This document shows, in pieces, positions 43,656 through 64,000 of a DNA stretch of 64,000 nucleotides. Numbering within the stretch: position 1 is the first letter of the stretch; every line of letters begins with the position of its first letter. The DNA is taken from IMG/VR virus record IMGVR_UViG_3300042402_002564, positions 62,001 to 126,000 of that record. One strand, written 5' to 3'. A program made the position numbers and the translations under genes. The notes below the pieces were generated by a model. It had not been told where the DNA came from, did no database searches, and was given only the letters and a program-made list of their open reading frames with translations.

Positions 43656-44468
43656 ATGAACAAATCCTTTCTCAAATGGGCAGGAAATAAGTATCGGGTT
43701 CTTCAACATATTTTACCCGAAATTCAATTCCCCAATCAATTTATTGAACCTTTTATTGGGTCTGCCTCTGTAACTCTTAATGTTTGTGCAGATACTTATG
43801 TGATTAATGATTTTAATAATGATTTAATTTCATTATATTCTTTTATACTTCACGATAATTCATTTATTGATGATTGTGAAAATTATTTTTATAATAAAAA
43901 CACTGAGGAATTATATTATTCTTGTCGTGAGGAGTTTAATACAACCGATGACAAAAGACTTAAAGCAATGTTGTTTGTCTATTTGAATCGTCATTGTTTC
44001 AATGGACTTACACGTTATAATAAATCTGGTCAGTTTAATGTTCCTTATGGAAAATATAAGTCTCTTTATTTTCCAAAAAAAGAGATGGAAAACTTTAAGA
44101 CAAATTTAAATCAAAGAAGTATTCAGTTATTTTCTGGTGATTTTGCAAATCCGAAAATTTATACTAATCTAACTGAGGATACAGTTGTTTATTTTGACCC
44201 CCCATATCTACCACTGACGAATACCGCAAATTTTAGTGATTATGCAACTGGTGGATTCTCTTATGATGACCAAGTAAGACTTAAAAATTTGGCATTAGGT
44301 CTACAATCTCAGGGAGTAAAAGTTATTATTAGTAATCATGATACTGAGGTGTCTAGAGAATTATATTCTTCTGCTTCTAGAATTCACAGTTTTAATGTTG
44401 GTAGATTTATTGCAGCAAAAGGAGTGTCAAGGCAACCCGTTAAAGAAATACTTGCTGTTTTTTGTTGA
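43656..44468 (+). CDS. dam: DNA adenine methyltransferase (Dam family)
   Basis: FLKWAGNK, EPFIGSASV, LNRHCFNGLTRYN, FNVPYG, DPPY and SNH. Confidence 0.93.
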   Translation: MNKSFLKWAGNKYRVLQHILPEIQFPNQFIEPFIGSASVTLNVCADTYVINDFNNDLISLYSFILHDNSFIDDCENYFYNKNTEELYYSCREEFNTTDDKRLKAMLFVYLNRHCFNGLTRYNKSGQFNVPYGKYKSLYFPKKEMENFKTNLNQRSIQLFSGDFANPKIYTNLTEDTVVYFDPPYLPLTNTANFSDYATGGFSYDDQVRLKNLALGLQSQGVKVIISNHDTEVSRELYSSASRIHSFNVGRFIAAKGVSRQPVKEILAVFC

Positions 44469-44554
44469 GACTCAGACCAATTATCGATCTGGCACACCCC
44501 ACCTTCACAGGTGGGGTGTTTTGCTTTATAATATCAACAGTTAAATCAAAATCC

Positions 44555-47500
44555 ATGTCCAGCAACTCTTCCTCTTCCTCCAGCGGTATCGGTTTTCCTG
44601 GTCTGCTGACTGTTCTGTTTATTGGTCTGAAACTTACTGGTCATATTACTTGGCCCTGGGTCTGGGTTCTTTCTCCCCTGTGGATTAGTGCTTTGATTGG
44701 TCTTACTATTATTGCTATCATTTTGATTGTTGGTGTTGCCTCTGGCATCTGGAAGTGATACGAAAAATTCTTAATCAGTTTCCTGCTCGCTATGGATCTT
44801 ATTCTGCTGAAGGTAACAAAATCCGTAGGACATTCTCCAACGGTTTTAGTTACATCGTAGAAGAATGTAAGTCACCACAAGAAGCACAACGCATCGTAAA
44901 AGATCTCAATCAACTTTTAAGCAAATGACTGAAACCAAAACCTATCCCTATCTGAAGTACATTCCACACTTTGTTGCACTTAGAATAGTTGTACTTGGTC
45001 CGTTTGCCATTGCACAAGCAACGGCAGAGTTCATCTCCAACTCTCTGGACAAAGTGTGCCATAAGATTGATAAATTTCTTCCATCACCTTATGTTGAAAA
45101 GCAAGTAGAATGGGATCAGTTGCCCAAACGAAATCAAGAAGCGATTGAACAACTTGCAAAAGCACGGGACACTACCAAAGAACGAATTCTCATTCAAACT
45201 GTGAAACCATGACTAAAATCCAACTCAAAGCAATCACAGTTACATACACCAGAACTCTCACAGTTTCTCCCACAACTGAAATGTTTGAGGACTGGGAGGA
45301 TTATCCAGATCAAGAAGCATTTGAGAGTTTAGTGCTTAATGAATTGTTTGATAAAATCCATTATGAGATGGGAGGACCTGCAAATCCTATGCCTTACACT
45401 AATGTAGAGCAGTTTGAAACCGTTGAGATTGACTGGGGGAGTGATGAAGAGGAGGATGAAGAATGACTGAAGAACTCCCAGTATCAAACGAATTCGTCAC
45501 ATTTGTAAGAATTCAACTTGACCACGAACAAAAGCAACAACTCAATCGTTTCCTAAATCTCCATTATCTTGGTGATGTGAATTGTAATGAGTATGATGAG
45601 AACTTCAAACTTGTTCCCAAATACCCAGAGAAAGAAACAGAAGAGTTCAAAGATGCTATGTGGAGAGCAGGTATGTGTGTAGATTATCAAGTCAAAGTGG
45701 TTTATGATGTGAATGGTGGTTGTAAATTGGAGTTGCTATGAAGTTATTTCAATACGATAAAAAGGTTTGGGATGATGGTGATACTGACCGCACTTGGCAG
45801 TTTGGTATCATCAACAATAAAACATTACTCTGGGTTCATTATGAAAATCCCAGTCGTTTAGTTTTTAGTGATGGTGGATTACACATCCTATTCTCATTCT
45901 TTACTAATTCTTTATTTGGTGTAGATTTTCAAGTTGCTAAGATTGGTTTGAGTTTCAACTTTTTTACTGAATACTTTGATGGGTGGGATGAATGACTGAC
46001 GAACAAATCCTTGAACTTGTGAGATTTCACTTTGAAGAGGGTGGGTTGAGAGACGATGGTAGTTGTTCTGAATATTTCGGAACTCCTGAAGATTTTATTG
46101 AGTTTGCCCAAGCAATTTATGAAATGGGTAATGAAAATGGTTGGGAAAGTCACCAAGAAAGTGTATACTTGAACTCCTCTTATCCTACTGATTATAACTA
46201 TGACTGACGCAGCATACAAAGTTTGGGAAGCATTCAAAGGTGAATTGATTGTTGAACCCACAGATGATATGAAAGAAGCACTTGCTACTGCTATCCGTGA
46301 GATTGCTGACCAACTTTATTTTGACCCTGATGTAGATTATCTAAATCGTCTTTCCTATAATGTGGAGGCACTATGACTGAACGAGCACAAAAGATTATGA
46401 AAGCATACGAAGCAGAGGATACTTACAACTTTCCAAAAGATGGAGTTGTTGCTGTTATTCGTGCTATTGTGAATGAACATCAATACTATCAGTGTTGTAG
46501 AGACCAGGATATAGAAGATATGGTAGTTGATGCTCGGGTGCTCTATGACCTTGCTGATGAATTGGAGGAACTGAAATGACTGAAACCGACATCTCTAAAG
46601 TTCTCATAGAAGGAGAATACGCAACCATTATGGGTGTGAAATATAAGAGAGTGGAAGAACCAAAGACACCAGCAGAAGAGGCATATAAAGATTGGTGGGG
46701 GGAATATCCTCCAACCAGTCCAGATGCTGATAGAAGAGACATAGCAAGGTGGCATGGTTTTCAAGCAGGTTATTATGCCTCACAAGAACCCAAAAAAGAG
46801 ACACAAAATGACTGACGAACAACTACTCAATTCACTACAAGGAACTATGGCTAAGATTGACCCGTATTCAGTTAAAAAAGAAGCAATTGATGAATATCTT
46901 ATAGACACAATTGAGGAACGACTTACTCGTATTGAAGATAAAGTTGATTTACTCATTACTCAACTTAAAATAGAGTTTTATAAGAAAAATGACTGAACCA
47001 ACACTAAAAATAGGACCATCAGGGTATAAACTGAACCCAGAGAAACTGAAAGGAGCACCTCAAAGTATTCTTCCTTATGTTTGTGGTGCCTTTTATTACA
47101 CCGAAGATTTTGAGTATTTTGATGTAATCAAACCTTATCTTGATATTCCAGAGAAACCTAAAACTCTGGAAGAAATCTCACAAGAGTTTGATGAGAAGAT
47201 TGATAAACGAATTGAGAGTATCAAGCATAAGTTTGCTGAACTCAAATGTCATCAAGAGTATCTTTACAATCAAAGGTTCAATAGAATTATTGAGGACTTT
47301 GAGTATGCGAAGAAGAACGGACAATTCCCACTAAAACCTAAATTTACTATAGGCACTACTCTTTCTGCGAATAGTAATATTACTTCCACTTTTGTAATCA
47401 AACAAGGAAATAAACACGAAGGGTATTATACAATTGGAAATGGTTATTTGAGGTTTTATATGCCTTATAAACCAAATGCTATTACTCGTTGGTTTATGAA

Positions 47501-50500
47501 TAAATGTCTTTCTATTAGATGGGTGGATGAGAAAAATGACTAAACTATCAGCAGCAGACCTTATGGTAATCCATAATACTCTTTATAAAAGTTTGAGTGT
47601 CGTTGGAAATAGTATTTGGACACAAGAAACCAGAGAAAGAGTTATGGATAAGGTGTCTATTATTATGGAAAATATGAACGCAGAAGTTGTCTGTGGTGAT
47701 GTAGAACCTATTGTAGTGAGTGGAGATGTTGGTGGATAGTATTGAAGAAATTCAAAAATACTTGGATGATAATAACATCACCTTTGAAGAGTATATGAGA
47801 GAAAATATGATTACTGATGAAGACAGGAAATATTTTGATAAGATATGGGTGGATGCGATTTATAAGAACTTGGGTGAGGACACTTGAAGAACTGGCACAG
47901 GGGATGCTCTGGGTGCCTCTGTGGGTGCTATAATACTTTCATACACAAAGGAACTCAAATGTTTTCTGAAGAAACTCAAGGCAAACTCTATAAACTTAAG
48001 GAAGAACTCAATTTTTCATCTTCTACTGTTACAGAAGTTTATAAACTGATGAAGGATGCTTATAGAGAAGGATTTGATTATGGATGTGTTCGGTCAAGTG
48101 AAGAAATGGTTTCTCTTGGTGTTCTTGCTGATATGACCGTTCAACAACTTGCTAATCTAATTGGAAGGGAGGACTGACACTTGAAGAACTGGTACAGGGG
48201 ATGCTCTGGGTGCCTCTGGATGCCCTATAATACTCTCATACACACAGACACCTGATGACTGACTTCTCTCAAGAACAATTTGTTGATTTGGGACAAACAC
48301 TCTATGTTGAGTGGTTGAAAACTTGTTCTAATATGCAAAGTGCTACTGAACAAGAACGACGAGAAGTGTTCAAGTTTGGTGCTGAACTTGCATTTGAGGC
48401 AGCAGAAGAGTTTGCTAAAGTATTCCATAATCAAGAGGAGAACTGAAATGTCTATCAGAGCAACTGAACTTCTCAAACTCTTTTCTAAAGCAAAACAACT
48501 TGATTTAAGTGTTGAGGTTTATGAGGACAAAGATGATGATTATGTAATTCGCATTTACGAAATGTTCCGTTCAGAAGGATTTGATGAAAAAATGTTCATC
48601 ACTCAAAAGGGTGAGAGCAACTGGAATAAGGCATCATACACTATTGATGGTATGATGGATATTCTTGATGTACAGTTGGAAGAAAAACGACAAGAGAAAA
48701 TCAAAGAACAAAAACGACAAGAACTTCTTGCTCGTTTGACTGATGAAGAAAAAAAACTTCTGGGGGTAAAATGACTACCGAAGAAAAACTCACACTTCTC
48801 CTCAAGGTTCTCAAAGAAGTAGCAGAGGTAAAACACTGCTATGAAGGTCTATTTGGAGATGATTATACTCCAAGTGCTGGTAGTTATGATGATGCCTTTG
48901 AAGATGGTTGTGCTTATGGTGAGATTACCTTTGCCCGCACTATGTTAGAATGTATTGGTGAAAAGTTTGAATACCCTTGTATGAAAGAAAATGACTGAAC
49001 GAGTAAAATTCAAAAGTATCACACGAGTAATTGACCCAAAGACCCGTATTCATTATCTTGATGCTGTTGATGAGAACGGGTATCACTGGATGGCACAAAT
49101 GGATCATAAAACTGAACCACACCTGTGCTATACTAAGGTATGGTATAAAGACCCGCAACAACCTTATGACGTTTGAAGAAATCCTAGAAGAATACGGACA
49201 GGAAGTATTAGACACATACTACGAACTGTTCCCAGACAAGAATGTATCAAAGTTTGGTGATAGGTGTTGTGGTTTTGTTGGTTCTTATGATGACTTTTTA
49301 GAAGATGTTTATCATTCAACGGGTAGTGATGAACTGGAAACAATTGATGATTTTGCTAATGGAGTGTTTTTAGAGTATTATTACTATGATGAAGGCACAG
49401 GTGTTGGATTTGTATTTTATAATGAGGAACGATGAGGATTGAAATTAACCATATTCCTCAAGACGATCAATATTTTATGAAAATCTATGATGGTCCAGAT
49501 GGGGTGGATGAAGATAGTTTTGTTTGTCGCAATCTTGGGGAATGTTTTGAGCAGATTATAATGTGGAGAACACTAAACGCACAACAGTATGTTGGAGGAA
49601 CTGAAAATGACTGAATTTCAACCAACTCCACAAACACCAGAGCAAGTTGCTGATGGACTTCGTGATGCCTTTAGACAAGCAATCAAAGATGGTGTGATGG
49701 ATGCTACTCCTTATCTTAAACAAATGACTTTCAAATCTGATATTGAAAAGACAGAAGCAGAAATAAAAGTGCTTCAAAAGAAACTGGAACTCCTCAAGGA
49801 GATTGAGAAACATAAATCTCAACCCAAAATGGAATTTAGTTTTGGTGGTAAGTTTGAGGTCGTCTCTTATAATGATGAGGTTTATTATCGTCTTGAATTT
49901 CCTGATGAATTTTATTGGTATAAAAAAAAGTATTCTGATGAGGGTTTGCTGATGGTTGCTATTATTGATGGTGAAACTCTTCGTCTTCTTGAAGGTGTAT
50001 GGTTTAATGATGTGAAGAAGGGGAAGTATGATGATGAACCTTATTGTCCTGATGAACCTCCTGAATATGATGAAGTAGAGTGGGATGAGAAAGACAACCC
50101 AAAACCTATGGATGAGGTTGTGAATAGGTTGATAAAACAACACCAAGCACAAAAACTCTACAATAGATTGTATGATGAACTTGGTTGTAATTTTGATACT
50201 CGTGAACAGATTGTAAATTTGGTTGAAGAATGGTTGCCTGAACCACAATCTGCTGCAGGAAGTCAAAATGTAGATACTGAATTGCTTGTTGATGGATTTA
50301 ATGATTGTTTGCGTAAAATCAAGGGGATGCTACGATGACTGAACGCAACTTTGCCAAAGAACTTTGCCATCACCGCTATATTGATATGGAGGATGGGAAT
50401 GATACTGAAACTATTTGCTATCCTTCTTTGATTTGTATTATCACCGAGTTGTGTGATAGGATTGAGAAACTTGAAAAGAAGTTAGAAAAACAAGAAGAGT

Positions 50501-52267
50501 ATGCTGCGGAGCAAAATGAACAATGATATGCCTTGGGTTAATCTCACACAAGAAGAAGTAGAAGAACTCCGCAACAAAAAACACGAACTCACTGAATACG
50601 GCAAAGAGAAACTGAGGAAACTTATGATGAATCAAGAACCATATCCAGACGAAATGTTTGAAGAGGCAGAACGTCGTGAGAAGAGTAATCGTGTTCTTCA
50701 ACGGTATAATGACTTCTACAATATGGAATGTGCTGGACTTCCTCACGGCACACCTATCACACCAGAACATCAACAAATGATTGCATTTCAATCTATGATT
50801 GATGCTCTACGGTGTGAGAACCTCAATCGTGAGTATAATGAGATTGCAATTAGTGATATTGAGGATTTGATTGCACGATTGGATGAACAAGCAACTGCAT
50901 TTCTTGAAAGAGTGAGAAAGAACAATGAGTGACAAACCATTCTATCGTTTCTTTGCGATTGATTATTGTGCGACTGGTGAAGGTCGTTCATTCTGGTTGA
51001 AGATCTGTCGCAACTATCAAAGAGTTGATGATAGAGACCGTGAATATGAAAAGTTTGCAAAGTTTGTTGATTGCGATCATTATATGCACGGATTTGATGA
51101 ACTCACAGAGAGGGAGTTTCTGGACAAATACACAAGGTTCATTCCATATTTTGTCGCAGAAATGATGCAAAGGAAAGACCAACCAGCATTCACTTGGGAA
51201 ACACATTTACACTTTAATTACTCATAATATATGTCTAAAAACTCTATGGAGAAAACTAAAATGAAAATCGAAACGAAGCGTCAACGACTATTTGATTTTA
51301 TTACTACATGGGAATCTGCTGTTTTTACTGAAAAAGAACATAAAGATAGGTTCTATACGTATCTTGGTTTGATTATTCAGTCTAGACTGATGAGTGACTT
51401 TGTACATCTCAATTCCGAAGATTATCCTGCATATGGAATTTTAGGTGATATTCCACTTTATGAACATATGAATGATTATGATATTGATGAAATTTATAAC
51501 AAATGCTTAAAAAAGACTAACGAGTAAAAATGGAAGTCACTGAACATAATGTTGATGCTGATTGGAACCATCATGAGATTGAAGCATTGATGGCACTGGT
51601 CAAAGGTCAAATGTTACGGGATGACAACGATAAGTTTATTCATTTGTTTTATGCCAAAATCTATGGTAAACTGATGGGAATGAAGCACGAGTTACTATGA
51701 CCAAACTCTGTAAAGATTGTAAGTGGTATCGTAAATCTTGGATAGAACATATCTTTTTTAGAACCAATAGGTATGATATGTGTGCCTCTCCAAATACCAC
51801 TGACGACCTTGTAACTGGTCGTAGACAACGATTTTGTGATATGTTGAGGTCAACTAGATGGGAGATTCTTGATTATTCTTGTGGTCCTGATGGTAGATAT
51901 TGGGAGGCAAAATGAAAGCATTTAAAATATGTTTTGAGTTGTGGAAGCAACTGATGACTTATGATGGTCGTGACCCTGAATGGGACTTTGAAGATTATCA
52001 AGGTATTTTTTGGGATTATCTAAACTACTCTTACATTAGAACAGAGTGGAGTATCAAGAGTGAATGGGAGTGGAAAAAATGACTAAATTAGTAAATTGGA
52101 CTGAAAACCCAGATGAGATTGTACTGGAAGAGGTGAAGTTGTTTCATCTGGAAAGTATGAATGAACGAGCACTGTGGATTGGTGTTTATGGACAAGATGG
52201 TAAGATTTATCATTTGAATATCACTGGTGATCAACTAAAATACTACTGGAGTGATGAAACAGTTTGA
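44555..52267 (+). CDS. Hyperplastic region of about 30 small, translationally coupled hypothetical genes
   Basis: Continuous + strand ORFs with 4- or 8-nt start/stop overlaps and no recognisable families. Confidence 0.6.
47879..48244 (+). repeat. 69-bp direct repeat (47879-47947 and 48176-48244) carrying an early promoter and flanking one gene
   Basis: 62/69 identical; GACACTTGAAGAACTGGYACAGGGG...TATAATACT. Confidence 0.9.
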
Positions 52268-52298
52268 GTAACTAAATATCTAAAAAAGCATTTATAAA

Positions 52299-52727
52299 AT
52301 GGCAATCAATAATACAACTTACCGATTACTTGTAGAGAAATTGGGAAACTCAGATCCTTCCTTATTTGTTGGTAATGAGGGAGAGGTATTTTATGATCCT
52401 GATGCAATATCTCCTATTTTTAAATTATCTGATGGATCTACTCCTGGTGGAATTCCATTTGATCCAAGTGTTATTCAAGACTTAAACGTTACCGATTATC
52501 TGCACATTGCTGGTATTGGTGTATCCCCACCACCATCAACTCAAACAAAACTTTTTGTTGGTGGTGAATCGGAAATTGCTAGTAATTTAAGCGTGAGTGG
52601 AATTGTAACTTCTTTTGGTGGATTTATTAGTGGAATAAGCACTGCAGCAGTTGAAATTACTATTTCTGGAAACAGATTAGTATTTACTGCTGCAGGAATT
52701 GGATCTACATCTTTTATATTGTCCTGA
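52299..52727 (+). CDS. Small virion/fibre-like protein
   Basis: FVGNEGEVFYD...LSDGSTPGG, Gly/Ser-rich, with a late-promoter-like CTAAATA upstream. Confidence 0.55.
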   Translation: MAINNTTYRLLVEKLGNSDPSLFVGNEGEVFYDPDAISPIFKLSDGSTPGGIPFDPSVIQDLNVTDYLHIAGIGVSPPPSTQTKLFVGGESEIASNLSVSGIVTSFGGFISGISTAAVEITISGNRLVFTAAGIGSTSFILS

Positions 52728-52806
52728 TCCACTTACAAAACTGCACATCAGGTGCCTTGCGAGGCACTTTTTTTATGCTATAATTGCTTTATGAAATCAA
52801 AGACCG

Positions 52807-53764
52807 ATGACTCTCCTTGACCGCTACAAAAACTGGACTCGCAAACAGTACAACAAACACTATTTTGAGTATGATTTCAAACCCCATTTCAAGTGGAATC
52901 CATTTGACACTGATAATGATTGGGTCTATGATAATGAGAAGTGGAGAAACTTCATTTGGGGGTGGCAGAGTGTGGGATATGCCTGGGAAGCATGGAGTTA
53001 TTGGATGAGGGATATGAAGTATCAATATAAACTTCCTCATGCGATTTGGTCAGAACTAAATGATGGTTATATGGCAATGTACATTTACTCCTGGACAAAG
53101 AAATGAAGATTTTTTATTATTTTTATCAAGAAGATTATGGTCATGAACTATATCTAAATATCTTCGCTTTTAAGATGTTTAATATATTTCAATTAGAATT
53201 CATGTGGGATGCTTGTCCAACATGGATCCCCTATCTTACGCTATCTTTTTTGGGACATTATGGTAGTCTTATTGGTATTACATTAGGATTTGGTAAATTA
53301 AGGTTCTCTTTTGACTTCCTTGCCTACCAACCCAAAAACTTGGATTATCTTCGTAGGTAGTATGGCAAAGATTAAATACTTCTTCTTAGATTTGTGGTAT
53401 AAGTATAAATCATGGAGATTTGAACGTAAGTGTATTAAACATCTTGGTATGAAGCCACAAAAAATGTATGTGACCAAAGAGCAATATGATGCTTTGGTTG
53501 AAGCAATCAACAAACCACCAGACCCTAAAGTAGTAGAAAGATTTAAAGAAATTATGAATAGAAAAGCACCTTGGGAAGATTAGTATGAAGGTTCCAACTA
53601 AAGCAGAACTAATACATCTTAAAATTCAAGCAGCAATGCGAGAGAAGAATTTTCCTGATGATGAGATTAAATACTTAGGTGAACGTGAAGGAACACATTG
53701 GTATCTTGTTGCTGGGAAATATGAAGTTCCAGTAGAAGATATTGTCGAATTTGAGGGAACATAA
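52807..53764 (+). CDS. Four small hypothetical proteins
   Basis: ORFs behind an early promoter at 52727-52784. Confidence 0.5.
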
Positions 53765-54138
53765 TGAACAATCAATACGATAGAGAAGAAGAACAAATAG
53801 AGTATACATTTAATGTAAACACTTCTGGAATGATTGAGATTGAATCCAAATCAATTCCAACTACAGAAACAATTATTAACAATGCTGCAGAGAAGGCAGC
53901 AAAAATTTTAAATGTTGACATAACCAATATAGATAAGATTAAGTTTTTAAGATTGTATCTTGCACTTTACTCATTGTGTGGATATAATAAAGAAAATCAA
54001 TCTGAGGGAGATAATATGATGCGTTGGTGGTTAAATACTGATAATAAACATCTTGGTTATGTTCCAGCAAATTATCTTCAACATCCAATTCAAATGGATG
54101 AAATTATTCGTTACTTAGAATCATTTAACAATCATTAA
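53764..54138 (+). CDS. Xre/MbcA/ParS-like antitoxin C-terminal domain protein
   Basis: FLRLYLALYSL...MRWWLNTDNKHLGYVPANYL...IIRYLE matches the W-L-x-x-x-N-x-x-L-G-x-x-P pattern. Confidence 0.65.
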   Translation: MNNQYDREEEQIEYTFNVNTSGMIEIESKSIPTTETIINNAAEKAAKILNVDITNIDKIKFLRLYLALYSLCGYNKENQSEGDNMMRWWLNTDNKHLGYVPANYLQHPIQMDEIIRYLESFNNH

Positions 54139-54145
54139 TTCAATT

Positions 54146-54692
54146 ATGCTCTCTACACAATACCGTCTTAAACTTCAGGCAATCTGCGATAAAATTGTTA
54201 ATCAAGAATCTGTAGATTTACATGATATGATTTGGGCAGAGAAACTTGCAAAAGTAAATCGAACTGCTGCAACAATGCTACGTCAGGCACGAAGAACCGC
54301 AGAGAATCCAGATATGCAAGAAGGAGATTTAGATGATTTTTTAAATCAACTTGATATTGGTGGTATTGGGCATGAGCGTAAAGGTATTCGCAGATTTGAT
54401 ACTGTTGATGAAATTGTAGACTTTTTTACGGAGGATAAACCCGATGACTGGAGACAGAGAGACTAAATCAACTGAGAGTTATGAACAACTTATTGAAAGG
54501 TTCAATAAGAGGACAACTCAATTAGAGATACGAAAAGAACAACTTCATCCCATGTATTCTGAATACGTTCAAATTGAAAGAGATTTAGAACGTTTACGTG
54601 GTTCCTTACAGGTTGCCGAATATCTTGCTTATGGTACATTACCAGGTGATGGTAATCATGATGGTATGAGACATCATAAACCGAGGAGATGA
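54146..54692 (+). CDS. Two hypothetical proteins
   Basis: ORFs 54146..54466 and 54444..54692. Confidence 0.55.
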
Positions 54693-54696
54693 TGTC

Positions 54697-54897
54697 ATGA
54701 AGACACTTCAAGATTTTTTGTCAGAGGAAGAAAAGTCTTCCAAAAGAACAGCAGAATATCAAAATGAACCAAAGGGTAATGAGAAGTGCTCTAATTGTAA
54801 TATGTGGCGAGAACCAAATGAATGTACTGCTGTAAAAGGAAAAATCTCTCCCGATGGTTGGTGTAAGTGGCATCAGTATGACCGAAAAAATCAGTGA
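54697..54897 (+). CDS. High-potential iron-sulfur protein (HiPIP)-like
   Basis: YQ..P...C-x2-C-x8-C-x12-C with VKGKISPDGWC; RBS GAGGAG. Confidence 0.8.
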   Translation: MKTLQDFLSEEEKSSKRTAEYQNEPKGNEKCSNCNMWREPNECTAVKGKISPDGWCKWHQYDRKNQ

Positions 54898-55335
54898 TTG
54901 GGATTTAATGAAGAAGGGAGATTCTGTAACTTTTCTCAGTTGTAGTACCTTCCAAATTCAATGGGGTAATAATGACGACCCATATCCAATTTTAGAAGAA
55001 GGTAAGATTTATACTGTTGAAGATGTAAGAATACATAGTTTACACACCAAAATCAAACTAATTGGTTATGATGGGTGGTATAATAGTGTTTGTTTTATAA
55101 GGAACGAATTATGAATGCAATTTTATGGAGTGGTACATTAGACAATCGTTATGAATGTACTGTAGAGCATACATCTCAATACAAAGGTCAATTACGTATC
55201 TTTGATAATCAGAACAACTCAGTTCTTTTGATTGAAGAAGTTGGTGTATCTTATGGTGCAACCTTTGGTGCTGATATGGGTGATGTATCTGATTGGCAAA
55301 ATCGCTGTGCAGAGTTTATTGATTCAATGACATGA
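54878..55335 (+). CDS. Two small hypothetical proteins
   Basis: Coupled ORFs. Confidence 0.5.
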
Positions 55336-55871
55336 GTGATATTCAAATTTATGATGATTATCTACCAGAGAATTATTTTAATCATCTACAAAATATTCTA
55401 TTGCATAAAGACCCAAACTTTGCATGGTATTATAATGATAATGTAGTCGATGAGAATGATCAGGACTTCCAATTTGTACATGTGTTCTATAAGAATCATG
55501 TACCAAATAGTCCTTATTTTAATGAACTCTCATTTGCGATTCAATCATTAAATCCATTGTCATTGATACGCATTAAGGCAAATCTATTACCACGTACACC
55601 AGAACATATTGAACATGGTATGCATGTAGATGTTCCTGATTCTGATTGTTCACATCTAAAGACTGCAATTCTATACATGAATACCAATAATGGTTATACA
55701 CTGTTTGAGGATGGTACAAAGGTCAATAGTGTGGCAAATCGTATGGTCATCTTCCCTACGCAAATGCATCATACTGGTGCCACATGTACGGATGAGAAGG
55801 TAAGAATAGTCATTAACTTTAATTACCTGTGCCAATCACAATTCAATTTACCAGGAATTCAAAATGGATAA
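55332..55871 (+). CDS. 2OG-Fe(II) oxygenase
   Basis: RIKANL, HVD, TAILYMNTNNGYT, HTG and RIVINFNY. Confidence 0.85.
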   Translation: MSDIQIYDDYLPENYFNHLQNILLHKDPNFAWYYNDNVVDENDQDFQFVHVFYKNHVPNSPYFNELSFAIQSLNPLSLIRIKANLLPRTPEHIEHGMHVDVPDSDCSHLKTAILYMNTNNGYTLFEDGTKVNSVANRMVIFPTQMHHTGATCTDEKVRIVINFNYLCQSQFNLPGIQNG

Positions 55872-57338: not shown

Positions 57339-58304
57339 ATGGCAAAATATTCGGAACGAATGATTCATGAGAATCAAAGACCAAATGGTTATAATGGCAT
57401 TTGTTTTGGTCTATTAGAAGATGCCGCAAGAAATAAGTTTTATGATGAATCACTCAAAAGAGCAAAGGGTAAACGTGTTGTTGATGTAGGTTCTGGTAGT
57501 GGATTGTTAGGGTTTTTAGCATTAAAACACGGGGCAAAGCATGTTACTTTTATTGAGCAGAATATTGTATCTTATTCTCATATCAGAAGAGTATCTGAAA
57601 TCATGAAGATTGATAAGTCCCGTTATCGTATCATTAATGATGAATTTGTTGCAAGTCGTTGGGATGAATATGATTTAAAAAACCCCGATATGATTGTACA
57701 TGAATTAGTTGGTAGTTATATTTGGAATGATACAATTGGACAAGCATTTAATCAGTTTATACCAAACGTAGAGATTATACCAAATTTATATGAATTAAAG
57801 TTTAGTATTATTCCTTTAAGCGAATCTGGTTTTAATTACCTTCGTAAGTATCAGAATGAGAAGTCTATTGAGAAGAGAAGATTCCTTGATGTACGTGTTC
57901 CTATTGATAAGAAGTTTATTGCTTATTATGAAAATGTTTTAAATGATTATGATTATGAGATAGGTATCGTTCCTAGAATAATGAGGTCATTGCATGATGA
58001 GTTGTTTAATAAACTATACTCAAAGGATAGAATAGAGTATTATACACATGTATTTGATATTAATAAAGAGAAGGATTATAAGAGTAATACTATTGCATCG
58101 TTTAATTTACCTAAGACAGATAATCCTTATTTAATCTTTATTCATCCGTATCTTCACTCTAAGAAGAATACATTAGACTTTGTAGAGAGTACCTCTTTTA
58201 GTGGTCATCGTAAACCTATACTGATTCCACCTAAAGCGAATTGTAATAAGTTAAGGTATGATGTATTGAAGAATTATATGACGATTGATGATGTAAAAGT
58301 ATAG
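57339..58304 (+). CDS. Class I SAM methyltransferase, PRMT-like paralog
   Basis: LLEDAARNKFY, VVDVGSGSGLL and DMIVHELVGSYIWND; same length as its neighbour (321 aa). Confidence 0.8.
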   Translation: MAKYSERMIHENQRPNGYNGICFGLLEDAARNKFYDESLKRAKGKRVVDVGSGSGLLGFLALKHGAKHVTFIEQNIVSYSHIRRVSEIMKIDKSRYRIINDEFVASRWDEYDLKNPDMIVHELVGSYIWNDTIGQAFNQFIPNVEIIPNLYELKFSIIPLSESGFNYLRKYQNEKSIEKRRFLDVRVPIDKKFIAYYENVLNDYDYEIGIVPRIMRSLHDELFNKLYSKDRIEYYTHVFDINKEKDYKSNTIASFNLPKTDNPYLIFIHPYLHSKKNTLDFVESTSFSGHRKPILIPPKANCNKLRYDVLKNYMTIDDVKV

Positions 58305-58491
58305 TTTTTAATGTTTTTATATTAAAAAATGTATTAAAAAACATATATTAGTGTTTTTAATGTGGTATTATACTAGTGTTATATGGTAGTCTTATACTCT
58401 TATAATCTCTCTTATATCCATTATAATCGTGCCAGATCCTTTGAGTTTTATGCTTATTATACCTCTGGATCCTTGTGATCTTAGGCTGCGT

Positions 58492-58580
58492 ATTATAGCA
58501 CAACCGCGAAAAAATGTCAAGACCCCCGCTCCAAAAACATAAGGACGCGGCATTTTACCATAAGACGCCCCGTGTGTCAA
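58492..58580 (-). promoter_or_regulatory. Two tandem leftward sigma70 promoters
   Basis: On the minus strand: TTGACA-17-TATAAT (58520-58492) and TTGACA-17-TAAAAT (58580-58552). Confidence 0.75.
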
Positions 58581-58588
58581 CTCCCAGA

Positions 58589-58833
58589 ATCTCGACGAGA
58601 ATACACGGTTATATCTCGACTAGATTACATCACGATATAACAGTATCATTATATCTTATAATCTCGACGAGTATATCACATAAGATCTCGTCGAGTCATA
58701 TTACAATATAACATTAGTATTATATCATACAATCTCGACGATACATTGTCACAGTATCATAACATAACTTCATAATTAGTCATAATTATCTCGACGAGTA
58801 TCATATATACCATCAATAAGATCTCGACGAGAT
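58589..58833. repeat. Array of seven ATCTCGWCGAGAT-like palindromes
   Basis: Copies start at 58589, 58613, 58661, 58685, 58732, 58788 and 58821. Confidence 0.92.
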
Positions 58834-58848
58834 GTGCGTCAGATTCCC

Positions 58849-58877
58849 TTGACAGGTCTTGCTGCATCATGTACAAT
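58849..58877 (+). promoter_or_regulatory. Sigma70 promoter
   Basis: TTGACA-17-TACAAT. Confidence 0.7.
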
Positions 58878-58901
58878 GTACACAGTTCGCACAAAGTTCT
58901 C

Positions 58902-60346
58902 ATGGGTAACACCGCATTTATGGAAGCACAAAAGCATAAGTATCGCGTCACTCTAGAACTCGACGTTCTTGGTGACTTCGACCCCCATAATATTAATTGG
59001 GAGAAGCTCTTTGACCTTAATCCTACAGAGAGTGTGAAGTCTTATGTGGAGGACTTGGACTATCCTTGGTAACAGAATATTATACCATAAGGGCATCTAA
59101 TGCGTCAAGTGCTGACGCACCCTTATGTGTATAAGTATTTCAAAGCTGGGGAAGTGACGATGTATTGTCGTCTGCAGGGATACCCTTCCCCTCTTCTGGT
59201 TGTCTGCAAATGATACATCAGAACGCCCGCAAAACCTGCATTGGGTGCCAGTTTGGTGAACCGTCCACCTGTGGCACAAAGACCCAGAAGATGTGGTGTA
59301 CAGTTGCTGGGCAAACGCAATTCGACCGATGATTTTTTTGACATCTACCAATCATGGTTGTGTGTATACTCTGTCTCAAGAGGACGGTGATGAGTTGTAC
59401 TTTGCACCCATCTATGCAAACGGAACTATTAATCTGGAGGAGTTTGCTCCTGTGGATATGAGTACTGTTGACATGGATGACATGGAGGTGTATGATATCC
59501 GTAACCGACTGGTTGCCATGTCCAATATTTGAACTGGCACAAGGGGGTTGACAAGACCCCCACCATCGGTTAAATTTAAATCGTTCACCACTCAACCAAA
59601 CAATGGGAACCCGCTCTCGCATCGGTTACGAACTTCCTGATCACTCCGTGGTTAGTGTTTACTGCCACTGGGATGGTTATGTAGAGAACAACGGTCGCAT
59701 TCTGGTAGAGCACTATCAGAACCGCGATGATGTACAAGAACTGATTGATGGTGGTTCTATGTCTTCTCTTCGCACAACTCATCTGTGGGAGACTGCAGCA
59801 GTACGTGATGAGGATGGTAAGATTGTAGAGAACCCTGATGGTAGTTGGGTTATGTCTCCAACCCGCGATGCACAACCTCTTTATCACACTGAGCGTGGTG
59901 AAGATCTGAATGTGGATCACACTTCATTTGATAAGTTTGTATCAGGTGATTGGGGTGAGGATTATGCTTACCTGTACGACCTCAACGGTAACTGGAAAGC
60001 ATATAAGATTGGGTGGGGACCTGTTGAGCGTGTGGACATCCCCAACTACGTGACAGCGTAGGAACTGGCACACGGGTCCTGGGTCATGACCTAAAACTGA
60101 CCTATACTTCTCTCAGTTCACACCACTCCGCTAATGGCACTCTCAAATCAATCCATGAATAAAATTGCAAGTGCAATGGTTCAAGAGGTTGTTGAGGAAC
60201 TTTATGAGTCCGATGAATGGATGGATTTCCTCTATACTAACATCGGTGGTATCATTGTTGGCAAACTTGGTCAAATTGATGATACTGTCCTGGCAGAATT
60301 GATTATGGGTGTTGCAGACCGTATTAGTCTCAAAGCACACACATAA
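58902..60346 (+). CDS. Early hypothetical genes (58902..59072, ~59329..59532, 59603..60061, 60134..60346)
   Basis: Each sits behind its own promoter. The 59603 ORF has the MGTRSRIG...YCHWDGY motif common in phage early proteins. Confidence 0.6.
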
Positions 60347-60423
60347 TCTCGACTAGATGCGTGTCACGTATCAAATCAATCTCGACGAGATACGTGACAC
60401 ATCATTTGACATCATCTCGATTA
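60346..60423. repeat. Second palindrome cluster plus 12-bp inverted repeat at the tRNA-Leu promoter
   Basis: Copies at 60346, 60379 and a half site at 60414; GTGTCACGTATC/GATACGTGACAC; TTGACA-17-TATCAT at 60406-60434. Confidence 0.85.
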
Positions 60424-60448
60424 TATGTTATCATATAATCAACCACAT

Positions 60449-60532
60449 GGGGATGTGGTGGAATCGGTAGACACAACAGACTTAAAATCTGTCGGAGGCA
60501 ACTCTGTGGGGGTTCAAGTCCCCCCGTCCCTA
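60449..60532 (+). tRNA. trnL: tRNA-Leu (TAA)
   Basis: Acceptor GGGGATG/CGTCCCT, anticodon arm ACAGA-CTTAAAA-TCTGT, long variable arm, GGTTCAAGTCC T-loop, no intron. Confidence 0.92.
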
Positions 60533-60592
60533 TTACCACTCTCAAGGTATATTATACCTGAGGTGGTCCAAACTCTTCTCCTAGAGGCACTC

Positions 60593-60733
60593 ATGCACGA
60601 ATCCACGCTTGATTTGTTTTGCTCTCATGATAATGATAATTTGGATATTGATGATGCTTTCATGTGTGCATTTGAGGAAGAAGCGTCTAAACTGGAAATC
60701 ACAGTAGATTATTATATCGCAGAGTTCCTATAA
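60593..60733 (+). CDS. Small hypothetical protein
   Basis: MHESTLDLF...YYIAEFL with a GAGG RBS. Confidence 0.55.
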   Translation: MHESTLDLFCSHDNDNLDIDDAFMCAFEEEASKLEITVDYYIAEFL

Positions 60734-60814
60734 TATAATGGGGAAGGTGTTTGCCCTAAAAGTTACACTGTTAGATATTAATATTCTATAAAACTAGTGG
60801 GTGGATATTATACA

Positions 60815-60844
60815 GACCTGGGGTGGTGCCCAGGTCTTTTTTTA
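60815..60844 (+). terminator. Rho-independent terminator
   Basis: AGACCTGGG/CCCAGGTCT followed by a T-tract. Confidence 0.75.
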
Positions 60845-60914
60845 TGTTTTGTAACAGACCTCGACAGGGGGTGCTGGTGTGGTATGATTTGAGAGTCAAC
60901 ACGGGAACCTCCCA

Positions 60915-63906
60915 TGTCTCTGGTTTGTGCCTCTGACCTTGCCACCCGCCGCCTGGTGTGGGTGAAGAACAACACCGCCACTGGTGTGCCAGCTGCCGCA
61001 CCGTCCGTCGTCTGGGCAGAGTTCGGTCGCCGTGGTATGATTTGATAGTTCGCAACCGAACCTCATGACCGTCCGCACCAACGTCCTTCCCCTGGATCTC
61101 TGCACTGTCACCCTCACCGAGGCACAGTGGAGCACGATCCGAACTGCTGTGCTCTGCCTCGCTTGTGATTGCCGCATCGCTGGCAAGACCACTGACGCAG
61201 ACTACTATCTGAACGCCTACAACAACCTGAAGGCAGCGATGGGGATGGACGCCTGACCTAGTGGCACAGGGGGACTTGCAAAGGTCCCCCACACCCCCTA
61301 CACTACATTTGTTCATTCAAAAACACCAATGCCAATCAATCTCACCAAAGAAGACCTCAACTTCTACGAAGAAAACTATTCTAATGTCATGCAACTTGGC
61401 ATGATTAACACCTTCGATGAGCGGAGTGATCGGATTCGCTTCCGTTCGATTGCAAAGGCAATTCAGGAGCAAATTGATTCTCTGCAAGTTGAGGATCAAA
61501 AGCGTGTTCCTTTTACAAAGGATGAGATTGTACCTGTTTTTGAAGAGTATCTGTGTTCTTATACTCTCAACGGTCAAGTGAAAGTTTTTGACCGCAAACT
61601 TGCTGCTTCTGGTATTCAATCGTTCCGAAAGAATCCTGTTGCTTCGGTGATGGGTATTCATGGTCAGATTGCATACTACGATCAATACAACGATGTTATC
61701 ACCAAATCGTTTGATCGTGCTGGTAACACTCTGAAGGAGATGCTCCGCCAGTATAATGAAATGATGGGTGTTGAGCGGTTCGCCCTGGACTGATTAACAA
61801 CCCTTATGGGTCAGGGGGTTGACTCCTGACCCATTCCATCCCATACTGTCTTTGTTCACCACTTGAACCTCATGCCCGAAATCACCTGGATTAACGACAT
61901 TCCGATGCCCACAATGTGGGAAGAAGATTATCAAGAAACAGAGTATAAAGATTACGAGGAATCTGATTGGTATAATGACCCTAACTGTGTCATGTCCCGC
62001 CATCATTATTGAACAATGATTGAAGTTCTTGCCGCTTACGTTGTCGGAATGATGCAGGTTGCACCTAATCTCATTCAGACAGATTACCTCAACGAAGACA
62101 AGCAAATCATTTCCGTCACTGAAGTAATCCAAGAGGTTCCACAATCATGACACTCACACACCTCAACTATCAAGAGATTGATGCCCTGATGGCAATTCTT
62201 GAGAGTAGTGATTGGCATTATCTGACTGAACTTGTGGATGCAGACATTCCGCTTCTGTATGACAAACTCACCGAAATGAGGGATGAACTGTGACTGAAAC
62301 TCTCCGACAGTATCACTTCACTGACGAACAGATTGACTTCCTGATGCGAATTGTGCGGAACAATGCACAATTTGAAGATGGTGAAGACCGTGAGTTCATG
62401 GAAGAACTTGCCAATCAAATTGAAGATCAAATCGTCAACCATCCTGACAACGACTGATGACACCTAACGCACCCTACGGTTGCCAAACCTATAAAGATCT
62501 GCTGGTCATGTTACAATCTATGACAGCAGAGCAGTTGGACTGCACTCCTACGGTGTATGATCCTGATGCGGATGAGTATTATCCTATCACCACACTTCTC
62601 ACCGCATCTGACACCAACGACGTGTTAGACTCTGATCATCCCTACCTCTCCTTCTGATGAACCGTTCTGAACTGCAAGACCAACTCATTCAGCAGATGTT
62701 GGATGACATGGATCTCAAGACAATGACCCAACTCTGTTATGATTATCTGGATGAGGGTTATGGTAAGTATTCTGATGAGGAATTGATCACTGAATGTGAA
62801 GAATACTACCCCGATTTGCTTGAAAATCAATAAAGTATAAATTATTACAGGATGGGTTGGTATCCTGATTGTCACCGATACCATAAAACTCTACAGAGTC
62901 TTTCCCGTCCTACCCAATCCCTGAACTGGCACAGACCCCTTGACAGGGTGCCAGGAATCGCTTAATCTAAGAAAACAAGCGGGGGTGAAGCATCCCGCTC
63001 AAAACACTTCACTCAAACCCTTACAATGTGATTTAATTATGTCTCAGTTCGCTTTTACTTCTTCCGCCATCGAAAGCATCTCTGATGTGAATGATGGTAA
63101 AGTGACTATCACCTTCAACGGTGGTCGTGAGTATACCTACGGTGTGCAAGATGTTGAGATGTTCGTGTCTCAACTGAGCACCGTGATTGCCGAACAGCAG
63201 TCCGTGGGTCGTTTTGTAAATAATGCTATCAAAACGGAACAACTGCTCGCAGTGACCGCCGCCTGATAGTATAATACGGGGGGAGGCAACTCCTCCCATC
63301 ACACTACTCCCAAAGAACAATGACTGATTACTTCGACCCTAACGAACAGTTTTCAATCCTTGATCTTATTGATGATTCACAACCTTATGAAGATTTCTCT
63401 CCTGAGGTTAGACAAATGCTTAACGAAGTTGAGTATTACGATGACTACTCTTATGGGGTAGAAGTCGATAATGATTACGACTAATCTCGACTAGTTAATC
63501 ATCATAATCTCGTCGAGATCACGTCATTAAATCTCGACGAGATACGCACACAAATCACTTGAAATTCTTCTCTTTAACATGGAAAATCGTTCGCTCCTGC
63601 TTTCGCTTCTTCGTAAAGGTCAAACTGGTGAAGAAATTCTCCAGATTCTGGAAACTATCATTGGCAGCGATGATGATAGTGATGGTCCTACCCTAAACCC
63701 CATCGATTTCTGATACAATGGAAACTGCATTTGTGACACCCGTATCTAAGAAAGCAAAAAACCGTTTTGCTAATCTTATGGGTGGACTTGATGAGTGTAT
63801 TGTAGAACAACACAAAGGAGACAAAGTGTTCCTCACAAGTGCAAACGGTAAAAACCATTTCTGGGTTAACATTAACAAAGATCCAGACTGGATTGTAGAG
63901 TTCTAA
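60915..63906 (+). CDS. Early region of small hypothetical genes
   Basis: For example 61065..61256, 61329..61793, 62457..62657, 63039..63266 (KTSC-like: SSAIESI...TFNGGREYTY) and 63718..63906. Confidence 0.55.
63484..63543. repeat. Third cluster of three ATCTCGWCGAGAT-like palindromes
   Basis: Copies at 63484, 63507 and 63531 (spacing 23 and 24). Confidence 0.9.
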
Positions 63907-63917
63907 GATTATACCAT

Positions 63918-63943
63918 CCCCCGCCAAGTGCGGGGGTTTTTTT
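63918..63943 (+). terminator. Rho-independent terminator
   Basis: CCCCCGC/GCGGGGG followed by T7. Confidence 0.8.
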
Positions 63944-64000
63944 ATACTTTATAGTATGCTTCCCACCCCTCCCGCCCTCTAGCGTAGGGGCGATGCCCCC

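What the first reader, a model, noticed from the sequence alone, without database searches (positions are those of the whole stretch)
44925..55339. Recurrent ATGA(C/G)TRA junction: a start codon carrying stops in both other frames
Seen: at least 16 genes start with ATGACTGA, ATGACTAA or ATGAGTGA (44925, 45209, 45463, 45992, 46200, 46373, 46576, 46808, 46989, 47536, 48991, 49607, 50335, 50925, 52079, 55332). Upstream genes end at either the first TGA (4-nt overlap) or the second stop (8-nt overlap, giving C-termini such as END*, KND* and QND*). Inference: a universal plug-in junction that terminates and translationally couples whichever out-of-frame ORF lands upstream, and supplies microhomology for shuffling gene cassettes in the hyperplastic region.
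Basis: partly seen in the sequence, partly recalled or inferred. Interest (0 to 1): 0.6.

Follow-up and report, generated by a model that had tools for sequence, protein, structure and literature searches.

The report
Frame-independent stop–start connector in cyanophage ORFan genes
In the fast-shuffling small-gene block of this freshwater T4-like cyanophage and its relatives, many genes begin with ATGACT(G/A)A, a start codon carrying stop codons in both other reading frames, so any upstream gene ends right at the next gene's start.

Summary
All 16 sites exist, and each is a gene start where the upstream ORF ends: nine 4-nt overlaps and seven 8-nt overlaps. A 17th start lies at 48255.

The window belongs to a complete 246.5-kb Kyanoviridae phage. 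The motif marks 15 of 39 starts in the block against 7 of 286 elsewhere (OR 25). Synonymous-codon and codon-shuffle nulls give 7-8.5.

The same clustering appears in S-SRM01, in the S-PM2 "ORFanage" and in 79 IMG/VR relatives (994 coding-strand hits against 68 reverse). It is absent from T4 and Syn9.

In one-vote-per-family tests, tightly joined genes carry the stop they do not currently use. The effect holds without ACT and is not significant for genes with upstream gaps over 10 nt. Near-identical genes sit behind a -4 partner in one phage and a -8 partner in another.

Homology breakpoints fall at start codons. Translational coupling is inferred, not tested.

The microhomology-for-shuffling idea has correlational support: motif families show more recent partner swaps, and recombinant junction types rise with shared letters. 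Against it, the S-PM2d deletion and the population variants do not break inside the motif.

Verdict: a real, apparently undescribed variant of known stop-start overlaps.

The parts
44925..44932 (+). ATGACTGA start of a 95-aa ORF. Upstream ORF 44755-44928 ends at the first TGA (4-nt overlap).
45209..45216 (+). ATGACTAA start of an 85-aa ORF. 4-nt overlap with 44925-45212.
45463..45470 (+). ATGACTGA start of a 92-aa ORF. 4-nt overlap. This gene is absent in co-occurring lake variants (joint 45437->45747).
45992..45999 (+). ATGACTGA start of a 71-aa ORF. 4-nt overlap with 45738-45995.
46200..46207 (+). ATGACTGA start of a 58-aa ORF. 8-nt overlap; the upstream protein ends ...NYD*.
46373..46380 (+). 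ATGACTGA start of a 68-aa ORF. 4-nt overlap.
46576..46583 (+). ATGACTGA start of a 79-aa ORF. 4-nt overlap. The 98.6%-identity homology with L013 ends at 46572, just before this start. The gene is absent in some lake variants.
46808..46815 (+). ATGACTGA start of a 62-aa ORF. 8-nt overlap; the upstream protein ends ...QND*.
46989..46996 (+). ATGACTGA start of a 184-aa ORF. 8-nt overlap; the upstream protein ends ...KND*.
47536..47543 (+). ATGACTAA start of a 67-aa ORF. 8-nt overlap; the upstream protein ends ...KND*.
48255..48262 (+). It is the first gene after a 77-nt intergenic promoter-like repeat, so neither stop is in use. A 96%-identity single-gene homology island in L013 begins exactly here.
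48991..48998 (+). ATGACTGA start of a 61-aa ORF. 8-nt overlap; the upstream protein ends ...END*.
49607..49614 (+). ATGACTGA start of a 243-aa ORF. 8-nt overlap; the upstream protein ends ...END*. The JGI gene call on a near-identical contig uses the same start.
50335..50342 (+). ATGACTGA start of a 63-aa ORF. 4-nt overlap. In L013 a different gene follows the same upstream gene; the two sequences share the 8-mer and diverge right after it.
50925..50932 (+). ATGAGTGA start of a 100-aa ORF. 8-nt overlap; the upstream protein ends ...NNE*.
52079..52086 (+). ATGACTAA start of a 62-aa ORF. 4-nt overlap. A 95%-identity single-gene homology island in L013 begins exactly here.
55332..55339 (+). ATGAGTGA start of a 179-aa ORF (PHROG 274). 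4-nt overlap.
44494..44532 (+). Hairpin followed by a T-run, overlapping a sigma-70-like promoter (TTCACA-17-TATAAT). Likely start of the operon that runs 44555-47887 without gaps.
   Evidence: fold z -3.9
47879..47950 (+). First copy of a 72-nt intergenic repeat carrying an extended -10 box (TGCTATAAT).
48176..48247 (+). Second copy of the 72-nt repeat (89% identical). A lake contig joins the two copies through 25 shared letters, deleting the gene between them.
52750..52784 (+). Hairpin with T-run followed by a TGCTATAAT promoter-like site. Likely end of the operon that begins at 48255.
43656..44468 (+). Dam-type (D12 class) N6-adenine methyltransferase immediately upstream of the block. The Dam gene of S-PM2 likewise precedes its ORFanage.

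Best explanation
ATGA-N-T-(G/A)A, mostly ATGACTGA(A), is the standard 5' end of small ORF cassettes in the polycistronic, promoter-poor ORFan block of this cyanophage lineage. ATG is the start codon. TGA at bases 2-4 closes one alternative frame, and TGA or TAA at bases 6-8 closes the other.

Whichever frame the preceding ORF is in, its ribosomes therefore stop 1-5 nt past the A of the next start codon, giving -4 or -8 spacing. From there they can reinitiate by termination-reinitiation coupling. No long out-of-frame overlap can arise.

The connector travels with the downstream gene, because homology begins at the ATG. Upstream partners are replaced on a time scale shorter than about 7% sequence divergence. 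Starts that close both frames therefore keep working after each swap and are retained, including the stop that is idle at present.

Shown: the anatomy, the enrichment, its conservation across relatives, the idle-stop enrichment, the use of both stops by the same gene family, and breakpoints at start codons.

Inferred: ribosome reinitiation, early-operon expression, and selection through partner turnover.
For: Anatomy and local enrichment.

The proteins are not paralogues, so shared ancestry does not explain the shared start.

The same clustering occurs in three genera and in 79 uncultured relatives: 54/12 forward/reverse hits in S-SRM01, 42/7 in S-PM2, and 994/68 pooled, with controls of 133/96.

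Codon-level signal: ACT makes up 82% of Thr second codons against 49% internally. RA follows ACT in 72% of cases, against 26-41% after other Thr codons and 26% after internal ACT.

Idle-stop test, one vote per family:
- In -4 families, NNT is followed by a stop-forming dinucleotide in 68% against 23% for NNV (p 2e-9).
- Excluding ACT, the figures are 62% against 27% (p 1e-4).
- In -1/gap 0-10 families, 62% against 21% (p 0.001).
- In gap >10 families, 33% against 26% (not significant).
- In -8 families the idle ATGA is present in 35/39, against 73/127 (p 2e-4).

Both stops are used by the same family in 11 of 18 families. There are 29 recent -4/-8 switches in motif genes against 2 in non-motif genes.

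Of about 900 recent homology ends, 46-48% lie within 8 nt of a start.

Operon layout: 14 gap-free genes lie between promoter/hairpin elements.

-4 and -8 spacings are each known to be enriched in overlapping gene pairs (PMC12548453).

T4 and Syn9 lack the signal, which argues against a general T4-like or host-driven start bias.
Against: - No expression or coupling data were obtained. RNA contigs were uninformative.
- ACT is favoured among Thr second codons even in genes with long upstream gaps (79%). About half of the region's excess survives as an amino-acid preference for M-T-E/D/K. An ordinary N-terminal preference therefore contributes.
- TAG is almost absent among idle second stops (1 of 323, against 5% of real stops). 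ACT dominates over the equally suitable ATT, AAT and AGT. Pure selection for stops predicts neither result.
- Selection for an idle stop through partner turnover is a second-order argument and was not modelled.
- Most counts rest on my own simple gene caller. GenBank and JGI annotations agree where checked.
Confidence: 0.6

Rival explanations
1. The 8-9-nt connector is itself the recombination substrate. Short-homology or microhomology-mediated exchange between identical junctions excises, inserts and swaps cassettes. The motif is common because recombination spreads and homogenises it. This can coexist with the connector function.
For: - Motif families show a recent precise upstream-partner change more often: 17/42 against 21/116 non-motif tight families, OR 3.1, p 0.006.
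- Where one upstream gene has two different downstream genes, both carry the motif in 59 of 211 cases. By my arithmetic, independence at the 27.5% base rate for tight junctions would give about 16.
- The share of junction-type pairs with an observed recombinant type rises steadily with shared letters: 2.0% at 3 nt, 2.9% at 4-5, 4.9% at 8, 5.9% at 9 and 11.5% at 12 or more.
- That excess beats 300 of 300 permutations even within dual-stop x gap-class strata (z 8.9). Letters upstream of the ATG contribute too.
- One specific sequence, ATGACTGAA, dominates over other dual-stop options.
Against: - The spontaneous S-PM2d deletion removes about 20 motif junctions, yet its ends lie 12 nt into p017 and in mid p050, with 1 nt of homology.
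- Lake-population variants lacking whole cassettes have 13-19 replaced letters and no shared letters at the joint. The only joint with real shared sequence (25 nt) lies between the 72-nt promoter-like repeats.
- All-time neighbour diversity is the same for motif and non-motif families (p 0.58).
- Half of the junction-located breaks share only ATGA.
- Alignment breakpoints mark where homology ends, not where crossovers happened.
- Undetected homology between short fast-evolving ORFs, and regional heterogeneity, could produce these correlations.
Confidence: 0.3
2. This is ordinary N-terminal and second-codon bias. These genes prefer Met-Thr-(Glu/Asp/Lys/Asn) with ACU at codon 2, for initiation efficiency or N-terminal processing, and the two stops are by-products.
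For: - ACT is 79% of Thr second codons even in genes with upstream gaps over 10 nt.
- Keeping the amino acids fixed already predicts 7.1 of the 15 motif starts.
- TAG is depleted and ACT is preferred over ATT, AAT and AGT.
Against: - The bias is local: 39% of starts in the block against 4% elsewhere in the same genome.
- It is absent from T4 and from Syn9, which also infects marine Synechococcus. ATGACTRA counts in P-SSM2 are no higher than the reversed-pattern controls.
- Codons 2 and 3 are coupled at the nucleotide level: RA follows ACT in 72% of cases but follows ACA/ACC/ACG in 26-41%.
- The same T-then-RA coupling holds for non-ACT codons, and only in tight junctions.
Confidence: 0.12
3. 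The conserved letters around the AUG are an operator for an RNA-binding regulator, such as a RegA-type translational repressor of early genes. Alternatively, they act as a backup terminator for ribosomes that shift +1 at the weak UGA-C stop.
For: There is nucleotide-level conservation centred on the start codon of one gene class. From my own knowledge, not tested here: T4-type phages encode RegA, which binds initiation regions, and UGA followed by C is a weak termination context.
Against: - The G/A degeneracy at base 7 and the extension to other NNT codons fit stop codons better than a binding site.
- There is no enrichment in T4 or Syn9.
- No regulator was identified or tested.
Confidence: 0.05

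Closest known systems
ATGA (-4) stop-start overlap with termination-reinitiation coupling (PMC6728339; review PMC12548453)
   Same: Nine of the 16 sites are classical ATGA overlaps between co-directional genes in one operon.
   Different: Here the same start also carries a second stop in the remaining frame. That stop is enriched even when idle. The review does not describe a combined form (no occurrence of 'both frames' or 'out-of-frame').
-8 spacing, NTGNNTGA (mentioned as a minor enriched class in PMC12548453)
   Same: Seven of the 16 sites are 8-nt overlaps of exactly this form.
   Different: In this gene pool, 35 of 39 -8 families also carry the unneeded ATGA. A single sequence, ATGACTGAA, accounts for 8% of all starts.
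PeSL mobile regulatory cassettes that mediate modular shuffling in T4-type phages (PMC2839356, PMC4122927)
   Same: Repeated short elements at gene borders in hyperplastic regions, associated with gene gain, loss and replacement.
   Different: PeSLs are intergenic promoter-plus-stem-loop elements tens of nucleotides long. The connector is 8-9 nt of coding sequence with no promoter or hairpin. Separate PeSL-like elements do exist here at low density, and one pair shows a repeat-mediated deletion in a lake population. Puxty et al. noted the low PeSL density in the S-PM2 ORFanage and called the shuffling mechanism unclear (PMC4503421).
Phage mosaicism with joints at gene boundaries (illegitimate or short-homology recombination followed by selection; e.g. 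PMC2327257, abstract only, plus own knowledge)
   Same: Homology blocks end at gene borders. Here 46-48% of recent ends fall within 8 nt of a start.
   Different: The border itself is standardised and frame-independent. This would raise the fraction of random joins that stay functional.
Off-frame 'hidden stop' (ambush) idea (own knowledge, not checked in the library)
   Same: Stop codons are kept in non-coding frames.
   Different: Here they sit at one defined position, act on the upstream gene's ribosomes rather than on frameshifted ones, and are enriched only in tight junctions.

Membership tests
-4 ATGA stop-start overlap (translationally coupled pair) | The start codon overlaps the upstream stop as ATGA, and the genes are co-directional | tested here: met
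   9 of 16 sites
-4 ATGA stop-start overlap (translationally coupled pair) | Downstream translation depends on upstream translation | not testable with these tools
   Needs reporters or ribosome profiling. Laid RNA contigs were uninformative.
-8 overlap (NTGNNTGA) | The upstream stop occupies bases 6-8 of the downstream gene | tested here: met
   7 of 16 sites
PeSL mobile regulatory cassette | An intergenic sigma-70-like promoter with an adjacent stem-loop, repeated around variable genes | tested here: not met
   The 8-mer lies inside overlapping coding sequence. The upstream 24 nt are not conserved beyond a weak SD-like G. Distinct PeSL-like elements lie at 44494-44532, 47879-47950, 48176-48247 and 52750-52784.
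PeSL mobile regulatory cassette | Deletions or replacements with end points inside the repeated element | tested here: inconclusive
   For the 8-mer: the S-PM2d deletion and the lake variants do not end in it, but recombinant types correlate with shared junction letters. For the 72-nt repeat: one joint with 25 shared letters.
Tandem paralogue family sharing an N-terminus | Detectable sequence similarity between the proteins | tested here: not met
   All-against-all BLASTP of 43 region proteins gave no convincing hit; the best E-value was 0.003, over 16 residues.
Genome-wide or host-driven second-codon bias | The same start context across the genome and in other phages of similar hosts | tested here: not met
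   4% of starts outside the block. No enrichment in T4 or Syn9, and ATGACTRA at control level in P-SSM2.

The most novel reading that the evidence does not exclude
The ORFan gene pool shared by freshwater and some marine T4-like cyanophages uses a standardised 8-9-nt connector, ATGACTGAA, with two roles. It is a frame-independent translational coupler, and it is the short-homology site at which the phage recombination machinery swaps single-gene cassettes. That would make it a recombinase-free analogue of an integron cassette system, kept in place by second-order selection for exchangeability and by frequency-dependent spread.
Probability: 0.3. Interest if true: 0.8.

Novelty: new variant of a known kind. 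Interest (0 to 1): 0.6.

Why it matters
Hyperplastic ORFan regions hold most of the unknown genes of T4-like phages, and how they are shuffled without wrecking expression is an open question. Puxty et al. called the mechanism in the S-PM2 ORFanage unclear.

A start sequence that closes both alternative frames gives a simple rule. Any cassette can be dropped behind any other and still be terminated and, presumably, coupled. This yields several practical consequences:
- It predicts true start sites in these genomes. Several GenBank starts in S-PM2 lie 3-9 nt upstream of a motif that coincides with the upstream stop.
- It offers a natural design for frame-independent synthetic operon junctions.
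- It provides a concrete, mutable 8-mer for testing whether microhomology drives cassette exchange in phages.

Tried and rejected
- Paralogy of the small proteins: rejected.
- Genome-wide second-codon bias: rejected.
- General T4-like or host-driven bias: rejected for T4 and Syn9. P-SSM2 does show the idle-stop effect at -4 junctions with AGT as a frequent second codon (11/17 against 6/28, p 0.005), so the phenomenon is patchy within Kyanoviridae.
- An extended conserved upstream element: only a weak SD-like G was found, and SD-like motifs occur in about half of motif and non-motif tight junctions alike.
- S-PM2 against S-PM2d as a natural test of motif-mediated deletion: the breakpoints are not at motifs.
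- All-time upstream-neighbour diversity: no difference between motif and non-motif families.
- Literature search for the 8-mer and for a combined -4/-8 junction: nothing found.
- Logan contigs of lake metagenomes and one metatranscriptome: these gave cassette presence/absence variants but no information on transcription or coupling.
- Pfam and PHROGs: nearly all genes in the block have no annotated function.
- The large protein searches, structure prediction and complex prediction were not used, because no claim here rests on them.
Full report
**What the window is.** The window is bases 62001-126000 of a complete 246.5-kb virus record with direct terminal repeats.
- The nearest named relatives are T4-like cyanophages of the family Kyanoviridae: the freshwater Synechococcus phage S-SRM01 (240.8 kb) and, in pieces, the marine S-PM2.
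- Lake-water metagenomes hold near-identical sequence.
- The finding lies in a block of small + strand ORFs that starts right after a Dam-type methyltransferase (43656-44468). The S-PM2 "ORFanage" likewise starts after S-PM2p001 Dam.
- Almost none of the proteins match Pfam or annotated PHROGs.

**The observation.** All 16 coordinates carry ATGA[CG]T[AG]A.
- The ORF table shows the upstream ORF ending at bases 2-4 at nine sites and at bases 6-8 at seven sites. The predicted ...ND*/...NE* tails are present.
- 48255 is a 17th motif start, behind a 77-nt gap.
- The + strand of the 10.4-kb region has 18 hits against 3.2 +/- 1.7 in Markov simulations.
- The genome has 36 forward hits, about half of them in this region.
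- With a simple gene caller of my own, the motif is at 15 of 39 starts in the block and 7 of 286 elsewhere (OR 25, p 1e-10). ACT is the second codon in 15 of 38 starts against 11 of 281.
- Keeping amino acids 2 and 3 and redrawing synonymous codons gives 7.1 +/- 1.9. Shuffling codon 3 among the region's genes gives 8.5 +/- 1.6. Both fall well short of the observed 15.
- The proteins are not paralogues.
- JGI gene calls on a near-identical contig use the same starts.

**It is a lineage feature.**
- S-SRM01 has 54 forward and 12 reverse hits, clustered at 50.8-59.7 and 67-76 kb.
- S-PM2 has 42 forward and 7 reverse hits, about 24 of them in the first 23 kb, which is its ORFanage.
- In the S-SRM01 GenBank annotation the motif also heads genes with no overlap at all, behind upstream gaps of 2-244 nt. 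It is therefore a property of the gene start, not only of overlaps.
- 79 IMG/VR loci found with one protein of the block hold 994 coding-strand hits against 68 reverse, with reversed-pattern controls of 133 and 96.
- T4 and Syn9 show no enrichment. In P-SSM2, ATGACTRA counts are no higher than the reversed-pattern controls. S-CRM01 has a small cluster.

**Is it more than codon bias?** I called genes on the window plus 81 loci, giving 3,922 genes in 729 families and 2,369 unique junction contexts.
- ACT is the top second codon: 615, against ACA 47, ACC 61 and ACG 22. Inside the same genes ACT is only 49% of Thr codons.
- RA follows ACT in 72% of starts. It follows the other Thr codons in 26-41%, and internal ACT in 26%.
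- The motif fraction by junction class is 61% (-8), 29% (-4), 20% (-1), 25% (gap 0-10) and 6.6% (gap over 10).

With one vote per family:

| Junction class | NNT followed by a stop-forming dinucleotide | NNV | p |
|---|---|---|---|
| -4 | 68% | 23% | 2e-9 |
| -4, ACT excluded | 62% | 27% | 1e-4 |
| -1 / gap 0-10, ACT excluded | 62% | 21% | 0.001 |
| gap over 10, ACT excluded | 33% | 26% | not significant |

- Conversely, 35 of 39 -8 families also carry the unneeded ATGA, against 73 of 127 NNT families behind long gaps (p 2e-4).
- So in tightly joined genes, the stop that is not currently used is nevertheless kept.
- In whole-genome controls the -4 test is negative in T4 (3/16 against 7/19) and Syn9. 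It is positive in this genome (11/20 against 4/28) and in P-SSM2 (11/17 against 6/28).

**Caveats on the codon evidence.**
- TAG is nearly absent among idle stops (1 of 323).
- ACT far outnumbers ATT, AAT and AGT.
- ACT is favoured even behind long gaps (79%).
- An ordinary preference for Met-Thr therefore contributes to the signal.

**Both stops are really used.**
- Of 18 families that nearly always carry the motif, 11 occur with -4 partners in some phages and -8 partners in others.
- Among gene copies at least 93% identical whose upstream sequence is unrelated, 29 motif cases pair a -4 junction with a -8 junction, against 2 non-motif cases.

**Shuffling and breakpoints.**
- Gene order in the block differs widely between relatives. 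The 243-aa protein at 49607 is two modules that lie apart in many loci.
- Against L013, 98.6% identity stops at 46572, just before the start at 46576.
- Single-gene islands of 95-96% identity begin exactly at 48255 and 52079.
- At 50335 the two phages share the 8-mer and diverge right after it, into different genes.
- Of 460 right ends and 440 left ends of HSPs at least 93% identical, 46-48% fall within an 8-nt span at a start codon. 93 left ends sit exactly on the A of ATG.
- Lake-population contigs show co-occurring variants that lack whole cassettes: g45463, g46576, g48771, and g48771 together with g48991. Homology resumes 2-7 nt before the next ATG in three of these joints and 9 nt past it in the g45463 joint.
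- The unit of exchange therefore runs from one start codon to the next.

**Does the motif drive the shuffling?** The evidence is mixed.

For:
- 17 of 42 motif families show a recent precise partner change, against 21 of 116 non-motif tight families (OR 3.1, p 0.006).
- Both downstream genes carry the motif in 59 of 211 right-hand breaks.
- The share of junction-type pairs for which a recombinant type exists rises from 2.0% at 3 shared letters to 4.9% at 8, 5.9% at 9 and 11.5% at 12 or more, after removing BLAST-related families.
- That excess beats all 300 permutations, including permutations within dual-stop x gap-class strata (z 8.9).

Against:
- The spontaneous 9,541-bp S-PM2d deletion ends 12 nt into p017 and in mid p050, with 1 nt of homology.
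- The lake variants have replaced tails and no shared letters at the joint. The only joint with real shared sequence (25 nt) is between the two 72-nt promoter-like repeats.
- Neighbour diversity over all divergences is equal for motif and non-motif families.
- Half of the junction-located breaks share only ATGA.
- Alignment breakpoints record where homology ends, not where a crossover happened. A frame-independent connector would by itself let more recombinants survive. Remote homology between short ORFs could inflate the correlation.

**Mechanism.** The block is organised as long gap-free operons between a few hairpin-plus-promoter elements at 44494-44532, 47.9, 48.2 and 52.75 kb.
- Within them each start closes both foreign frames, so upstream ribosomes always terminate at -4 or -8.
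- Both of these spacings are known to be enriched in overlapping pairs, and the overlaps are linked to termination-reinitiation coupling (PMC12548453; PMC6728339 and PMC10666635, abstracts).
- About half the junctions also have an SD-like element, equally for motif and non-motif junctions.
- Coupling itself was not tested.

**Novelty.**
- -4 and -8 overlaps, PeSL-mediated shuffling and mosaic joints at gene borders are all known.
- I found no description of a combined, frame-independent start with an enriched idle stop, nor of its dominance in the ORFanage-type gene pool.
- Puxty et al. state that the recombination mechanism for this region is unclear.
- I rate it a new variant of a known kind.

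Noticed in passing
window 47879-47950 and 48176-48247: A 72-nt direct repeat (89% identical) flanks the 72-aa gene at 47959. It carries an extended -10 box (TGCTATAAT) and is also repeated in related loci such as L060. One lake contig (run X8) joins the two copies through 25 shared letters, deleting the gene. An RNA-library contig shows the reverse joint. It resembles the PeSL cassettes of T4-type phages.
   Followed up: partly
window 44494-44532 and 52750-52784: Strong hairpins with T-runs overlap or abut sigma-70-like promoters (TTCACA-17-TATAAT; TGCTATAAT). They probably delimit the operons that hold the motif genes. The first folds at z -3.9.
   Followed up: partly
window 49607-50338: The 243-aa protein is a fusion of two modules (about aa 1-142 and 149-243). 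In many relatives these are encoded apart, e.g. L042 7224-7642 and 9974-10450.
   Followed up: partly
pooled loci; e.g. window 46568-46578, 48440-48450, 49598-49609: GAACTGAA directly before the ATG is the commonest upstream 8-mer (55 of 2,275 starts). It is read in different frames in different upstream genes (LEELK* against GGTEND*). Together with ATGA it also stops two frames.
   Followed up: partly
S-PM2 record AJ630128 (L003), e.g. record 7285/7288, 7689/7695, 11880/11889, 13342/13351: Several GenBank start codons lie 3-9 nt upstream of an ATGACTRA that coincides with the upstream gene's stop. The motif position is the more likely start.
   Followed up: no
P-SSM2 whole genome (L106-L118): The idle-stop effect at -4 junctions is present (11/17 against 6/28, p 0.005), with AGT rather than ACT as a frequent second codon. 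T4 and Syn9 lack the effect.
   Followed up: partly
window 55332-55871: The 179-aa protein matches PHROG 274, labelled 'DNA endonuclease V' (E 2e-55). In Pfam it has only a sub-threshold 2OG-Fe(II) oxygenase hit, so the PHROG label may be wrong.
   Followed up: no
window 53764-54138: The 124-aa protein has a sub-threshold Pfam hit to the Xre/MbcA/ParS antitoxin C-terminal domain (E 1.6e-4, below the cut-off).
   Followed up: no
window 58001-64000: G+C rises to 0.40-0.46, against 0.29-0.37 in the rest of the window, and GC skew flips to about zero or negative.
   Followed up: no
window 44900-50890 in lake metagenomes X1, X2, X8: Logan contigs over the block are very short (about 200-450 nt) and numerous (about 200-265 laid per run). 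This fits many co-occurring variants of this region in single lake samples.
   Followed up: partly
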